From Lytechinus pictus (lineage: Eukaryota): DNA of 64,000 nt. Made by a program: the position numbers and the translations under genes. The notes below the pieces were generated by a model that worked only from the letters and a program-made list of their open reading frames with translations, ran no database searches and was not told where the DNA came from. The first letter of the stretch is position 1, and the number at the start of each line of letters is the position of its first letter. Positions 23,401 to 38,633 of the stretch are shown here, piece by piece. Where the stretch lies: positions 15,376,001 through 15,440,000 of the forward strand of contig NC_087246.1 of the NCBI RefSeq assembly GCF_037042905.1, in the 5' to 3' direction.

Positions 23401-26400
23401 TTTCTCTCAAACTTTTGTTTCACCATTCTGTTTTATTCATTTTTTCCTTTCCAACACAACATTTTATGACCAAGGGTCCAAGGCTGGATTCACCTCTAAA
23501 AATGCATCTACTAGTAGTTGGAATAGATTTAAATAAGGTGAGGAATAGAATGGGTAGTGGAAAATGGTTGGAGGAAGAGTAACAACGAGAAAGGCTTGTT
23601 GCAGGAAAAATAGGGTGGGGGAAGTTGTTACAGGGAATAAAGAGGAGGAAAAACAGAAGGAATTAAAATGAGAAAAGAGCAACTTGGGAAAACAGGAATA
23701 GGGAAAGGATGAGTCTGCACTCTAGAATGGAAAAGAGTGGTCATGGTAAATTTAACAGGTTGTGTGTGTAATTCTTTCCAATATAGATGTAACTGGCCCC
23801 AGCTAAGTGAGCTAACACATTTACTCTCTAGTACATGTACATGTACTTTTGAGGCCATAATCAGGTATGCAGAAAATTGAAAAATTACAGTGGTTCATAT
23901 TACAAATATGAATCAGATTTCTTAATTTAATTTAAGTACTCGGTATTTGATATAAATAAATTTTGCAACATGCATTTGTCATCACAAATATAATTGCATG
24001 AATGATATACTTTTTGCAGTTTTTAGCTCTGAAAGGGGAAGTTCATCCTGAAGAAAAAATTAAAAAAAATATTGGTGAAGGTTTGAGGAAAATCCATTAA
24101 AGATTAAGAAAACTAAATTTTAAGATTTGGATTTGTGACGTCATAAATGAGCAGCTGCCCCATATGTTATATAATACAAAATGCATAAATTTCAATTTTT
24201 TAATTGTGATGACTTATTTTTGTTTTCTTTTGATGAACAGGTTTGAAATGATTTGTCTATTGATTTACTGAAGGTACAGTAAAAAAGTAAAAAGTAAAAA
24301 AAAGTTTCACTGATTTTTTACCATATACATGTATGAAAGCTGCTTGCATATGTGTCACAAATCAAATAATTAAAGTTCTTACATGTGTAACTTTTTTATT
24401 CTTTGATGGAGTTTTCTCAAAACTTTGGCTGTATTTTTAATTATTTGTTTTCTGTTATTTTTACAATTAACTTTTTGTCAGGGTGAACTTCCCTTTTAGT
24501 ACTAAGCACAATCTGTGTCTCAAGAAAATTTAGTTTTAAACCTACCTTGGCTACTCATAGTCTTGACCATTGGGAAGTTGTAACGATCTGTTGTCAGCTT
24601 ATCGTCCAGAGTAAACGTCCTCCTCCCTTCAATCTCATCATCTTGATGCTCGCCTTCGTCATAATGACGACGGACCTTGTGGCGCTAGATAAACAAATTG
24701 ATCACGTGATCGGGAGGTCATTTTAATGATTTATTCATGATATATTCTAGCAAACTTTTCTCTTCTTCCACTCTTCTGAAATCTTTTAAATTACTTTACT
24801 TACTTATTCTGCCATTTTCCATCAGACCCAAACCATTCACAAAAATTAAATTGTGTGGAATTATGTAATCTTAAAAACTATAAACCATAACCATATAAGA
24901 GATGGGTTTTTAATGCCTTCCTGAATAAAGTTAGGGATGAGAATATCTACTTGTAAGTGAAAGATCATTCCAGTATTTTGAAGCTGACAGAGTACACCTT
25001 CTATCACAGGCAATGCTGGTTACTGAATACATGTATGTGAAATGAAGAGGGTATATTGGTCGGCCTTAATACAGGGAAACACTATCACTTATCCAAAGCT
25101 CATTGAATATAGGAAGAAGATAGACCTACACTGTACACTAACATTTGAAATTCAAAGAAATGGAATGAATAGCTCTGAGGATAATACTACAGATAAATGC
25201 ACATTGTAGCCTACACTAAACAAACAAGCTAACGTAACATACATGCATGCACTATATGCCTAAAATTGTCATGATTTTGTAATGAATTGATAAATTGATT
25301 TTAAAATGACATTTTACAAAATGGCCTCAGTAGAGGTGATTTTCGTACCAAAATTAACAAACTCTTTTAACAGGAGATTTAATGATTCAAATACATGTTT
25401 ATATCATGAATTTTGAAAGTTATTATTTGTTATTCATCAAATTAAGGATTGCAAACATATGTATGCATACAGGGAAATCCATTTGAAATCAGACATGATC
25501 AAACAAGGAAATATGCACACTGGTTTTCTCCAGTATTCCACGTCCTTTTAATTTCAACACAAATCGTAAGCCATTATCCATATTGAATCATACTTCATAG
25601 GTCTTACACATGTGTGGTTTCTAAGTGGTCTACTCATGCGGAGAGGTGTGTGCAGCATTGTATCAAATGTGTATTAAATGGATCAGTTTAGTAGAACAGT
25701 GGGAAAGCTTGAGTTCATAATTTGTAAAGAGGCCTAATGTTGGCATGTACTACAACAGTGCATTTTAGCATTGACCATAACCAGGCAATAGACACGTGTA
25801 CTCAAGAAGCTGATCCTTTCACAAAGAAAGCATCTTTTCCATTCATTGCGAGCTGTAACAGTTCAATGCCCGGTCCATAAAAGAGGTCACTCCAATCATA
25901 TCTTCATGCTGCAAGGCTAAAAGATACTGTACAAAGGAACCATCCTGAACCCAGACCCCCCCCCCCTCTTCCCTTCTCTCTCTTCGTCTCCCCCTAAACT
26001 CTATCTCTCTCATACACTCTCTCTTTCTCTCATTTGTTCACTCACAAGCCCCCTCTCCCCTTTTTATTGTGCTTCTCCCCCTCCCTCTCTATCTGCTTTC
26101 CCTGCAGCTGTGCCATTGTCAAGCTTCCCACACACAGCATGCAGCCAATCAAAGACCAGCAACATGACCAGCAATGCAAACCCCCATCCCCTAGACCTTT
26201 GTCCACCAGACAAACAACACAAGTGCATGTCGCATCTCCAACACAAAGAAAACTCACCCACATTCACAGAAAGCACTGATCCAGCTTTCTCTCAAACAGA
26301 ATGCTTTTACTCCTACTCCAAACTGCACCAAGCACAACACTAACACTCTTGTGAATGAGTCCAATACTTTCTATATTTTGCCTGTTGTTGGGAGTCAGAG

Positions 26401-38400: not shown

Positions 38401-38633
38401 GTAAGGGATGGATTGATCCTCCACAATAATAATCTATACGAGGTAAAATGTAAAGGTTATAAAGATTTTTCTCAAAATTTTCAATTGTCAAAATCGCAGC
38501 ACTCCGTTCTGCACAAAATAAACGACACTGAATTCTCATGTGCCTTCGACAAAGCGGAACATTTATGACCATTAAAGATGAAAATCGAAGTCTTACTCAC
38601 CAAAGACCGACCAGTTTCCGTTTGCGATGTCAT
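5289..38633 (-). CDS. KDM2: Lysine-specific demethylase 2 (KDM2A/B co-ortholog; JmjC, CxxC, PHD, F-box, LRR), complete 17-exon gene, about 1118 aa
   Basis: Exons in transcript order: 38633-38601, 24684-24546, 22848-22770, 22367-22321, 21211-21039, 20737-20631, 20121-20028, 19032-18879, 18258-18143, 17794-17225, 16551-16465, 15177-14956, 14684-14427, 13807-13754, 13417-13355, 7059-6096, 5485-5289. All introns are GT-AG, phases match, total 3357 nt. Peptides [55 protein letters not shown] and GWIHAVYTP closely match KDM2A/B; the Fe ligands H-x-D...H are intact. Confidence 0.95.
6096..7059 (-). CDS. KDM2: KDM2 exon 16, F-box and leucine-rich repeats
   Basis: [38 protein letters not shown] (F-box), followed by LRRs ([19 protein letters not shown]...). 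Confidence 0.95.
7494..7697. mobile_element. PIF/Harbinger-like MITE
   Basis: TIR GGGGTGTTTCAC with CAG flanks; relatives at about 4924-5180, 41859-42015 (CTG flanks), 54782-54910 and 55725-55870. Confidence 0.65.
8168..8312. mobile_element. PIF/Harbinger-like MITE
   Basis: TIR GGGCC(C/T)GTTGCAGAAAGAGTTG; central CCAAT. Confidence 0.7.
14427..14684 (-). CDS. KDM2: KDM2 exon 13, PHD finger and acidic tract
   Basis: CSIC...[14 protein letters not shown]...NSWECPKC; AAG acceptor chosen to keep phase 0. Confidence 0.9.
14956..15177 (-). CDS. KDM2: KDM2 exon 12, CxxC zinc finger
   Basis: [43 protein letters not shown]; acceptor CAG, donor GTAAG. Confidence 0.95.
15253..15478. mobile_element. 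Tc1/mariner-type MITE, copy 1
   Basis: TIR similar to CAGTTGTGCTCAAAAGTTAGTG; shares the internal gagcccagagaaacaaact with the copy at 35838. Confidence 0.7.
17225..24684 (-). CDS. KDM2: KDM2 exons 2-10 (JmjC region)
   Basis: Continuous reading frame across nine GT-AG bounded exons; [27 protein letters not shown] and KFRYPFY motifs. Confidence 0.95.
19040..19420. repeat. Polypurine low-complexity tract (pyrimidine-rich on the KDM2 sense strand)
   Basis: A/G-dominated sequence directly upstream of the exon 8 acceptor. Confidence 0.8.
21822..21988. repeat. Long imperfect hairpin, probably the end of a non-autonomous repeat starting near 21430
   Basis: gtgcaatggtgcgagatttcgcat / atgcgaaatctcgcaccattgcac arms plus an inner gctctattcaac / gttgaatagagc stem. 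Confidence 0.7.
22908..23495. mobile_element. Kolobok-like non-autonomous element
   Basis: TTAA|AGGGGAATCCA...TGGATTCACCT|CTAA; related fragment at about 46783-47050. Confidence 0.7.
24034..24495. mobile_element. Kolobok-like non-autonomous element
   Basis: AGGGGAAGTTCATCCTGA...TCAGGGTGAACTTCCC; related copy at about 59475-59913. Confidence 0.7.
27052..27187. repeat. Inverted repeat with arms of about 48 bp (1 mismatch)
   Basis: acttttaattctatttttaagtgcatgtttgga... and its reverse complement, about 40 bp apart. Confidence 0.8.
28120..28944 (+). CDS. Orphan 274-aa basic/coiled-coil protein nested antisense in KDM2 intron 1
   Basis: Stop-free frame 28069-28944 in AT-rich intron. Splice acceptor (pyrimidine tract, TTACAG| at 28103) 16 nt before ATG 28120; AATAAA at 29004 and 29281. 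No recognisable catalytic domain. Confidence 0.6.
   Translation: MSAKSAYQRWHEWKLRVVSDSNQHENIKQRQREQKRKERAKFKEEASNTQLEAKRAADRQRQRRRRARLRAAKEMEAASGTGPVVDAGSINPRVVQQMTNKGREHSHSKSSRPQMKISVTGLISAKKGNRIPDKNIAAPTKGLHSWDNLNGHGNQQFHGRMEAKVKDVKQKRPVARNTRFLGDLLVPKNNNLLSFSSPLGPNTQQIPEQDQPLCLKTVPRLAKTIDRDYKRTLISPSEHLKKVNSSSPDSWNTDLSGRKRSRKQSVPLKYVALH
29818..29848. repeat. (CA)n microsatellite; (AAT)n at 30404-30443 and degenerate (ATT)n at 34480-34570 are also inside the hAT
   Basis: Direct inspection. Confidence 0.9.
31368..34033 (-). pseudogene. hAT transposase (TTF zinc finger, ZMYM1/DUF4371-like region, hATC), 3 coding exons, one premature stop
   Basis: Exons 34033-32774, 32577-32256, 32095-31368 give 770 codons. 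Motifs CFYC...[38 protein letters not shown]. In-frame TAA at 31736-31734 (codon 648, YP*L). Confidence 0.9.
35838..36060. mobile_element. Tc1/mariner-type MITE, copy 2
   Basis: TA|CAGTTGTGGTGAAAAGTTAGTG...CACTAACTTTTGAGCACCACTG|TA. Confidence 0.75.
38601..38633 (-). CDS. KDM2: KDM2 exon 1 ([11 protein letters not shown])
   Basis: ATG preceded by an in-frame TGA, donor TTG|GTGAGT, phase 0; joins [10 protein letters not shown] (compare human KDM2A QRL-RGTMRRRYED); lies in a locally CpG-rich region. Confidence 0.75.

What the first reader, a model, noticed from the sequence alone, without database searches (positions are those of the whole stretch)
24546..38633. Transposase exon poised for in-frame splicing into KDM2 (host-transposase fusion in waiting)
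Seen: the hAT is in the same orientation as KDM2 inside phase-0 intron 1. Its first coding exon has an acceptor (GATTTTAG|GAT TCT AGG ATG, exon start 34042) and a strong donor (AAG|GTGAGT, exon end 32774). The exon is 1269 nt (423 codons), stop-free and phase 0 at both ends. KDM2 exon 1 > TE exon > KDM2 exon 2 would give a 1541-aa protein; TE promoter > TE exon > KDM2 exon 2 would give 1527 aa. Both add a TTF zinc finger and the N-terminal transposase region to an intact H3K36 demethylase/PRC1.1 subunit, and both bypass the element's nonsense codon. Known precedent: SETMAR, CSB-PGBD3 and KRAB-transposase fusions arose by splice capture. Inference: a fusion could retarget KDM2 to hAT/MITE ends. 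Phase compatibility can also arise by chance, and the TE donor normally has a much closer acceptor at 32577.
Basis: partly seen in the sequence, partly recalled or inferred. Interest (0 to 1): 0.8.

Follow-up and report, generated by a model that had tools for sequence, protein, structure and literature searches.

The report
Silent young transposon in KDM2 intron
A recently inserted hAT transposon lies in the first intron of the sea urchin KDM2 gene with an exon that could splice in frame, but RNA reads and gene annotations show only normal KDM2 splicing, so it is an ordinary intronic transposon.

Summary
KDM2 exon 1 (38633-38601, 11 codons) and exon 2 (from 24684) flank a phase-0 intron. The intron holds a sense-oriented 5,101-bp hAT element (29593-34693) with 14-bp TIRs and an 8-bp target duplication. 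The element's exon 34042-32774 is 1269 nt, stop-free and phase 0 at both ends. The 1118-aa KDM2 model is exact, so the predicted 1541 and 1527 aa follow.

The window is Lytechinus pictus. No fusion is seen:
- In three rRNA-depleted RNA runs, exon 1 splices to exon 2 (21 reads in one run, consensus agreement 1).
- No read covers either splice site of the transposon exon.
- RefSeq models the element as a separate "ZMYM1-like" gene.
- All 11 Lytechinus KDM2 isoforms are 1097-1124 aa.

Three of the four alternative KDM2 first exons lie downstream of the element. The in-frame geometry belongs to the transposon family, not to this locus, and is expected by chance in about 1 in 20 insertions into phase-0 introns.

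Side observation: the same element is 94-99% identical in DNA in the sea louse Caligus rogercresseyi and near-identical in other organisms. This is a horizontal-transfer candidate.

The parts
38601..38633 (-). KDM2 distal first coding exon ([11 protein letters not shown]), donor TTG|GTGAGT, phase 0
   Evidence: Identical exon in L. variegatus. N-terminus of P0142 and P0299. 21 RNA reads leave 38601 for exon 2.
24685..38600 (-). 13.9-kb phase-0 intron of the distal-promoter KDM2 isoform
29593..34693 (-). 5,101-bp hAT transposon (DUF4371 / ZMYM1-like family), sense to KDM2, single copy in the window
   Evidence: TIRs, TSD, Pfam DUF4371 and Dimer_Tnp_hAT, no other copy in the window. RefSeq models it as XP_063962429.1.
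34694..34701 (.). 8-bp target-site duplication GGTTCGGG, upstream copy
29585..29592 (.). 8-bp target-site duplication GGTTCGGG, downstream copy
34680..34693 (-). 5' terminal inverted repeat CAGGGGCGTAGACA
   Evidence: only two matches in 64 kb, 0.18 expected by chance
29593..29606 (+). 3' terminal inverted repeat CAGTGGCGTAGACA
34043..34143 (-). Putative 5' UTR intron of the element (GTG|GTGAGT ... TTTTAG|G). Use by the element's own mRNA is not shown.
   Evidence: Sequence. 100% identical in the Caligus copy. No RNA reads there.
32774..34042 (-). Transposon first coding exon from acceptor to donor: 1269 nt, 423 open codons, own ATG at 34033, TTF-type zinc-finger region plus DUF4371
   Evidence: Depth is 0 at both of its ends in three RNA runs.
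32578..32773 (-). Transposon intron 1 (196 nt)
   Evidence: RefSeq models P0125, P0130 and P0008, and P0002, read ...SGKFK|GIFQD... across it. Acceptor has 12/18 pyrimidines.
32256..32577 (-). Transposon exon 2 (contains the LCPTRW motif)
31368..32095 (-). Transposon last coding exon with the hAT dimerisation domain, interrupted by an in-frame TAA at 31736-31734. RefSeq bridges the stop with a modelled intron (ISGK|DVLAV).
26258..26263 (-). Alternative KDM2 first coding exon 'MW' (ATG TGG|GTGAGT), downstream of the element. This is the CDS start of the KDM2 gene in the current annotation.
   Evidence: P0295 and P0301 begin MW|RHKV
25608..25658 (-). Alternative KDM2 first coding exon [17 protein letters not shown] (1124-aa isoform X1)
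24951..24968 (-). Alternative KDM2 first coding exon MIFHLQ (1113-aa isoform X2)
24546..24684 (-). KDM2 exon 2 ([24 protein letters not shown]...), the common acceptor for all first exons
29366..35488 (.). 6.1-kb segment absent from the orthologous L. variegatus intron: the hAT, the SINE-like repeat it sits in, and about 0.8 kb more

Best explanation
This is a young hAT DNA transposon of the DUF4371 / "ZMYM1-like" family. It is coding-defective because of one nonsense codon. It inserted into a SINE-like repeat inside the long intron between the distal first exon and exon 2 of Lytechinus pictus KDM2.

In the RNA examined, the spliceosome removes it together with the intron. Exon 1 joins exon 2 directly, the element's own exons are essentially untranscribed, and KDM2 protein is made in its normal 1097-1124 aa forms. 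The in-frame, symmetric exon is real but is a built-in feature of this transposon family. It corresponds only to step (i), insertion into a host gene, of the known three-step route to host-transposase fusion genes. Step (ii), alternative splicing into the host transcript, has not happened detectably.

Shown: the anatomy, the host species, canonical exon 1 to exon 2 splicing, silence of the element in three runs, and absence of any annotated or assembled fusion. Inferred: that the insertion is neutral or slightly deleterious, and that it is recent.
For: - **Anatomy:**
- **Host and locus:** window 21368-44033 is 100% identical to L. pictus CM073227.1. The RNF25 ORF is 404/405 identical to the L. 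pictus protein.
- **RNA (three rRNA-depleted runs, about 1.25-1.3 Gb sampled from each):**
  - The exon 1 bin has depth 5.2, 5.0 and 1.0.
  - 21 loose ends at 38601 in X21 have a consensus, at agreement 1, that is the reverse complement of the start of exon 2.
  - No 38601>34042 joint is listed.
  - Depth is 0 in all three runs in the bins holding the 34042 acceptor (33850-34249) and the 32774 donor (32650-32849).
  - The rest of the exon is at 0-1.25.
- **Annotation:** the element is a separate gene that starts at its own ATG (P0125). The longest KDM2 product at the locus is 1124 aa. The 11 Lytechinus KDM2 isoforms are 1097-1124 aa. None of the top 120 KDM2 clusters carries DUF4371 or the hAT dimerisation domain. 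Every close relative of the transposase whose N-terminus is present begins at MAHNKK or an alternative N-terminus, never with KDM2 sequence.
- **Splice-site context:** the 34042 acceptor has 9/18 pyrimidines, against 12/18 for 32577, 32095 and 24684. Four other AGs within about 60 nt give stops within 10 codons.
- **Recent insertion:** perfect TSD, absent from the L. variegatus orthologous intron, and a 2.8-kb contig with 0 differences over the 1,522 nt laid, at about 10 times the depth of the unique intron pieces.
Against: - Only about 6% of each of three runs was read. The tissue or stage is unknown.
- Exon-1 junction counts for X22 and X23 were not displayed.
- A joint is listed only from 3 reads. 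For 21 canonical reads out of 21, the 95% upper bound on alternative use of the exon-1 donor is still about 13%.
- It is not known whether the RNA donors carry the insertion. Unique intron sequence has zero depth, so the RNA cannot genotype them.
- The current RefSeq release omits the distal-exon isoform that the reads clearly show. Absence from annotation is therefore imperfect evidence.
Confidence: 0.85

Rival explanations
1. In some tissue, stage or stress condition the transposon exon is included as a cassette exon (exon 1 > 34042..32774 > exon 2), or is used from the transposon promoter. This would give a 1541- or 1527-aa KDM2 with an N-terminal TTF zinc finger and half a transposase core.
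For: The frames are compatible and the exon is open. The donor AAG|GTGAGT is strong. A transposon-borne acceptor just upstream of the ORF is the usual entry point in known fusions (Cosby et al.). Sampling depth was modest and the conditions are unknown.
Against: - Zero reads at either exon boundary in three runs, while exon 1 to exon 2 junction reads are present.
- No such product in two RefSeq releases or among assembled proteins.
- The donor would have to skip its own acceptor 196 nt away in favour of one 8 kb away.
- The acceptor is weak and has competing out-of-frame AGs.
- By inference, the exon ends inside the RNase-H-like catalytic core, so the insert would probably be a misfolded half-domain next to JmjC.
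Confidence: 0.06
2. Gene-trap outcome. Distal-promoter KDM2 transcripts splice exon 1 into 34042 and then follow the element's own introns to its 3' end. The result would be a transposase-like protein with a 14-residue KDM2-derived leader, truncated by the TAA, and fewer full-length KDM2 transcripts from that promoter.
For: This is the usual form of young host-transposase chimeras: host upstream exons plus transposase as the terminal exons. The element lies sense to KDM2 with ordered splice sites. The current RefSeq release no longer models the distal-exon isoform on the assembly that carries the insertion.
Against: No reads at 34042 and near-zero coverage of all the element's exons. Exon 1 to exon 2 junction reads are present. 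The only AATAAA downstream of the element's stop is 1.4 kb away at 29981. The RefSeq model of the element starts at its own ATG.
Confidence: 0.05
3. The ORF is not a transposon but a domesticated ZMYM1-like host gene nested in the KDM2 intron, as the RefSeq name suggests.
For: RefSeq gives it a gene model and a protein. The family has many members named "zinc finger MYM-type protein 1-like".
Against: - It has TIRs and a perfect 8-bp TSD.
- It carries an in-frame nonsense codon that the model skips with an invented intron.
- It is absent from the orthologous L. variegatus intron.
- It is multicopy, with near-identical copies at non-syntenic sites, including in another phylum.
- It is essentially unexpressed.
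Confidence: 0.02

Closest known systems
Host-transposase fusion genes born by splice capture (KRABINER, SETMAR, CSB-PGBD3; Cosby et al., bioRxiv 10.1101/2020.05.07.082677)
   Same: A DNA transposon sits in an intron of a chromatin or transcription gene in sense orientation. [quoted passage not shown] In the paper, 8 of 9 traced fusions use such an acceptor, derived from the ancestral transposon.
   Different: Only step (i), insertion, is present here. No alternative splicing to host exons is detectable and there is no sign of selection. Known cases put host N-terminal domains in front of a transposase C-terminal part. Here the host would contribute only 11 residues upstream. The proposed product instead needs the transposon exon to act as an internal cassette that skips the element's own downstream acceptor.
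Autonomous-type hAT transposons of the DUF4371 / TTF-zinc-finger group (annotated as 'zinc finger MYM-type protein 1-like', 'TTF-type domain-containing protein')
   Same: Domain order DUF4371 then hAT C-terminal dimerisation domain, the LCPTRW motif, 8-bp TSD, short TIRs starting CAG, and a multi-exon transposase gene.
   Different: This copy has a premature stop before the dimerisation domain. It cannot encode a full transposase, although other copies read through that position (P0130, P0002).
Ordinary intronic transposon insertions removed with the intron
   Same: Canonical host splicing across the element, the element transcriptionally silent, and the host protein unchanged.
   Different: Nothing material. 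The in-frame symmetric exon is a coincidence of family design and intron phase.

Membership tests
hAT superfamily DNA transposon | 8-bp target-site duplication | tested here: met
   GGTTCGGG at 29585-29592 and 34694-34701. The Caligus copy has its own 8-bp TSD, GGTATCGT.
hAT superfamily DNA transposon | Short terminal inverted repeats | tested here: met
   14-nt CAGKGGCGTAGACA at both ends, 13/14 complementary. These are the only two matches in 64 kb.
hAT superfamily DNA transposon | Transposase with the hAT C-terminal dimerisation domain | tested here: met
   PF05699, E=2.6e-09, downstream of the stop codon. Also found in the RefSeq model P0125.
hAT superfamily DNA transposon | Intact transposase ORF (autonomy) | tested here: not met
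   In-frame TAA at 31736-31734 before the dimerisation domain. The copy is non-autonomous.
DUF4371 / TTF-type zinc-finger (ZMYM1-like) hAT subgroup | DUF4371 domain following an N-terminal TTF-type zinc finger | tested here: met
   PF14291, E=3.2e-23, residues 140-363. Relatives are named TTF-type domain-containing or ZMYM1-like. The TTF finger itself has no Pfam model and is read from the C-x2-C...H-x5-H pattern.
Host-transposase fusion gene | Transposon inserted within a host gene in sense orientation with compatible splice sites and frame | tested here: met
Host-transposase fusion gene | Transcripts joining host and transposase exons, with RNA support for the junctions | tested here: not met
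   No joint 38601>34042 and zero depth at 34042 and 32774 in three RNA runs. No fusion protein in databases.
Host-transposase fusion gene | Purifying selection on, or syntenic conservation of, the captured transposase part | tested here: not met
   Absent from the orthologous L. variegatus intron. The element carries a nonsense codon.
KDM2 (JHDM1) H3K36 demethylase / PRC1.1 subunit | JmjC, CXXC, PHD, F-box and LRR domains in order, intact ORF | tested here: met
   zf-CXXC and PHD_4. F-box-like. Precomputed JmjC/Cupin_8 and LRR_FBXL15 on the gene product. P0142 residues 12-1118 map colinearly with no break.

The most novel reading that the evidence does not exclude
In a stage or tissue not sampled here, for example germline or early embryo where transposon silencing and splice choice differ, carriers of this insertion include the 1269-nt transposon exon in distal-promoter KDM2 transcripts. 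This would produce a polymorphic KDM2 isoform with a TTF zinc finger. It would be a host-transposase fusion caught at birth, in a chromatin regulator, in a laboratory sea urchin in which it could be tested genetically.
Probability: 0.04. Interest if true: 0.65.

Novelty: already known. Interest (0 to 1): 0.15.

Why it matters
If a fusion were real, it would be a rare live view of the first step of transposase capture by a Polycomb-linked demethylase, in a tractable echinoderm. As it stands, the locus shows the opposite. An insertion can satisfy every sequence-level precondition for exon capture and still be spliced out cleanly. Phase-compatible transposon exons in introns should therefore not be scored as fusions without junction reads.

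The practical by-products are:
- a corrected picture of KDM2 5' ends in L. pictus: four alternative first exons, and a distal one that reads support but the current annotation lacks;
- a RefSeq "ZMYM1-like" gene model that is really a stop-containing transposon copy;
- a strong candidate for recent horizontal transfer of a hAT element between sea urchins and a parasitic copepod.

Tried and rejected
- **The repeat finder on the element** was swamped by ATA-type microsatellites and did not show the TIRs. They were found by eye, by script and by pattern search. My first TIR/TSD coordinates were off by a few bases and were corrected.
- **The first Pfam call failed on a frame error.** It was rerun.
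- **Read laying could not hold both 32577 and exon 1** within the 6,000-letter limit. I chose 32650-38649, so the 32774>32577 junction could only have appeared as loose ends. None appeared, because there is no coverage there.
- **I first thought the window might be Caligus rogercresseyi,** because the best transposase hit (97%) is from that species. This was rejected by the RNF25 comparison (89% to L. variegatus, 404/405 to L. pictus) and by the exact match to the L. pictus chromosome.
- **I first took P0002 as transcript evidence for the element's introns.** Its N-terminus is shared with an S. purpuratus RefSeq model (P0129), so it counts only as model-level support.
- **I looked for a clean empty site in L. 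variegatus.** The whole 6.1-kb segment, including the SINE that hosts the insertion, is missing there. Absence is shown, but not a base-exact empty site.
- **The insertion could not be genotyped in the RNA donors.** Unique intron depth is zero and reads around 34700 are dominated by other SINE copies.
- **Searches for chimeric proteins found none**.
- **Literature searches found no report of this element or of a KDM2-hAT fusion**.
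Full report
**1. Observation**

- KDM2 exon 1 is ATG ACA TCG CAA ACG GAA ACT GGT CGG TCT TTG at 38633-38601. It is followed by GTGAGT, so the intron starts in phase 0.
- Exon 2 starts at 24684 after ATCTAG and reads [24 protein letters not shown]..., the conserved KDM2 N-terminus.
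- Between them, 34042-32774 is 1269 nt and translates to 423 codons without a stop. It begins DSRMAHNKK and ends SGKFK, between TTTTAG| and |GTGAGT.
- An in-frame TAA lies at 31736-31734.

The RefSeq protein XP_054749214.1 (P0142) is 1118 aa and begins [11 protein letters not shown]|RHKV. Its residues 12-1118 map colinearly to 24684..5292 on the minus strand.

**2. What the inserted element is**

It spans 29593-34693 (5,101 bp).
- It has 14-nt terminal inverted repeats, CAGTGGCGTAGACA and CAGGGGCGTAGACA. These are the only two matches in the window, with 0.18 expected by chance.
- It has a perfect 8-bp target-site duplication, GGTTCGGG.
- It sits inside a tRNA-like SINE, and the window holds no second copy.
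- Pfam finds DUF4371 in the first coding exon and the hAT dimerisation domain after the stop codon.
- Relatives are annotated "zinc finger MYM-type protein 1-like" or "TTF-type domain-containing protein".
- Gene models of close relatives read ...SGKFK|GIFQD... and ...IVSG|MLEAV....

It is thus a non-autonomous copy, with one nonsense codon, of an otherwise complete multi-exon hAT transposon.

**3. Host and locus**

- The RNF25 exon in the window is 89% identical to L. variegatus and 404/405 identical to L. pictus.
- Window 21368-44033 is base-for-base identical to L. pictus chromosome CM073227.1, 15397368-15420033.
- At this locus RefSeq annotates the element as a separate 754-aa gene (XP_063962429.1). 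The gene starts at its own ATG and bridges the TAA with a modelled intron.
- RefSeq also annotates an antisense 274-aa gene and a KDM2 gene. The longest KDM2 product is 1124 aa and its CDS range begins at 26263, downstream of the element.
- The isoform N-termini show at least four alternative first coding exons. All join exon 2 in phase 0:

| First exon | Coordinates |
|---|---|
| [11 protein letters not shown] | 38633-38601 |
| MW | 26263-26258 |
| [17 protein letters not shown] | 25658-25608 |
| MIFHLQ | 24968-24951 |

Only the first of these makes the element intronic. That distal exon is identical in L. variegatus and was modelled in the earlier L. pictus release.

**4. Direct test of the fusion**

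Three rRNA-depleted paired-end RNA runs of the same species label were laid on 32650-38649, together with one contig set. About 6% of each raw run was read, roughly 1.25-1.3 Gb each.
- The exon 1 bin has depth 5.2, 5.0 and 1.0, on the strand expected for a minus-strand gene.
- In X21, 21 reads end at 38601. Their overhang consensus, at agreement 1, is TTCGTCATAATGACGACGGACCTTGTGGCG. This is the reverse complement of the first 30 nt of exon 2.
- No 38601>34042 joint is listed.
- Depth is 0 in all three runs in the bins that hold the acceptor (33850-34249) and the donor (32650-32849). The rest of the transposon exon is at 0-1.25.

So the element is near-silent, and its splice sites are unused in these samples.

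The contig set X1 covers the element colinearly through its introns, with 0 differences over the 1,522 nt laid. Its depth is about 41, against 3-5 for unique intron pieces. This looks like DNA-level signal from roughly ten near-identical copies.

**5. Database test**

- The 90% cluster of Lytechinus KDM2 holds 11 proteins of 1097-1124 aa from two annotation releases of L. pictus and from L. variegatus.
- A search with the KDM2 N-terminal 150 residues allowed candidates up to about 1950 aa. It returned no Lytechinus-like protein longer than 1124 aa, and none of the 120 listed clusters carries DUF4371 or the hAT domain.
- All proteins at least 90% identical to the transposase that were inspected and retain their N-terminus begin at the element's own ATG or at an alternative start. 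None carries KDM2 residues.

**6. Splice-site context**

- The 34042 acceptor has 9 pyrimidines in positions -20 to -3. The element's own acceptors at 32577 and 32095, and KDM2 exon 2, each have 12.
- Of five AGs within about 60 nt of the ATG, only 34042 gives an open frame from a phase-0 donor. The others stop within 3-10 codons.
- The 32774 donor is strong, but its cognate acceptor is 196 nt away, against 8.1 kb to exon 2.
- The cassette-exon product would end inside the RNase-H-like core. This is an inference from the domain positions.

**7. Is the geometry special?**

It is not.
- The stretch from the 5' UTR donor through the acceptor and the first codons is 100% identical in a copy from another phylum. 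The open, length-divisible-by-three first exon is therefore a family trait.
- Any sense insertion of this family into a phase-0 intron is equally "poised".
- For a generic element the chance is about 1/2 x 1/3 x 1/3.
I did not test that note.

**8. Age**

The TSD is perfect. The orthologous L. variegatus intron passes directly from the equivalent of window 35489 to 29365. It therefore lacks the element, the SINE that hosts it, and about 0.8 kb more, and it has no TIR match anywhere in 50 kb. The insertion is specific to the L. pictus lineage and may be polymorphic. P0142, from another individual, differs from the window at several KDM2 residues.

**9. Comparison with known cases**

Cosby et al. 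(10.1101/2020.05.07.082677) describe three steps in the birth of a host-transposase fusion: insertion, alternative splicing through transposon-borne splice sites, and selection. [quoted passage not shown]

This locus resembles step (i) and has the right kind of acceptor. It fails the defining test of junction-supported chimeric transcripts. It also differs in topology, because the host would contribute only 11 residues upstream.

**10. Verdict**

The structure is right and a fusion is not evidenced. The best explanation, at 0.85, is an ordinary, recent, silent intronic hAT insertion that is spliced out with the intron.

Remaining uncertainty comes from modest read depth, unknown tissues, and the unknown carrier status of the RNA donors.

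**11. Side observation: possible horizontal transfer**

- The closest protein outside the host genus is from the sea louse Caligus rogercresseyi, at 97%.
- A Caligus chromosomal copy (L001, CP045890.1) has its own 8-bp TSD, GGTATCGT.
- That copy aligns from TIR to TIR at 94-98.7% DNA identity, including about 97% in the 660-nt non-coding 5' end.
- Over 1165 coding nt there are 16 differences, in 10 synonymous and 6 non-synonymous codons.
- The flanks of the Caligus copy share nothing with 114 kb of urchin DNA.
- The cluster at 90% amino-acid identity also contains S. purpuratus proteins.
- DNA runs under four other organism labels hold 0.70-0.75 of the element's 31-mers.

This pattern fits recent horizontal transfer among echinoids and a copepod. 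No report of it was found.

Noticed in passing
window 29593-34693; L001:7304-14347: The same hAT element is present in the sea louse Caligus rogercresseyi (CP045890.1) with its own 8-bp TSD. DNA identity from TIR to TIR is 94-98.7%, including non-coding parts. The cluster at 90% amino-acid identity also holds S. purpuratus proteins. DNA runs under four other organism labels hold 70-75% of its 31-mers. This is a candidate recent horizontal transfer between echinoids and a copepod.
   Followed up: partly
window 24951-26263 and 38601-38633: KDM2 has at least four alternative first coding exons that all join exon 2 in phase 0. The distal one ([11 protein letters not shown]) is supported by RNA reads and is conserved in L. 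variegatus. It appears to be missing from the current L. pictus annotation, whose KDM2 CDS range starts at 26263.
   Followed up: partly
window 31368-34033: RefSeq XP_063962429.1 ("zinc finger MYM-type protein 1-like", 754 aa) is this transposon copy. The model skips the in-frame TAA by an invented intron (ISGK|DVLAV). It is an annotation artefact rather than a host gene.
   Followed up: yes
window 28069-28944 (+): The ORF antisense to KDM2 in the intron is annotated as a 274-aa gene in L. pictus. It has a 273-aa annotated counterpart at the orthologous place in L. variegatus, with 92% DNA identity over the region. It has no Pfam domain.
   Followed up: partly
window 29366-35488: Relative to L. 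variegatus, L. pictus has an extra 6.1-kb block in this intron. It holds about 0.8 kb of unknown origin, a tRNA-like SINE, and the hAT nested in the SINE. Whether the roughly 1-kb carrier is an insertion in L. pictus or a deletion in L. variegatus is not resolved.
   Followed up: partly
window 34702-34870 and 35850-36250: These are very high-copy repeats. The SINE around 34700-34850 reaches a contig word depth of about 14,600, and about 2,500 at 35850-36050. Both are transcribed on both strands in the RNA runs.
   Followed up: no
window 29648-29689: The element's 3' subterminal region carries tandem GCGAAGC-type units (AGTGAGGGCGCGAAGCGCCCG / AGCGAGGGAGCGAAGCGACCG). This resembles the mini-hairpin modules noted elsewhere in this genome's hAT elements (family D14; earlier notes s1-323488 and s1-306880).
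   Followed up: no
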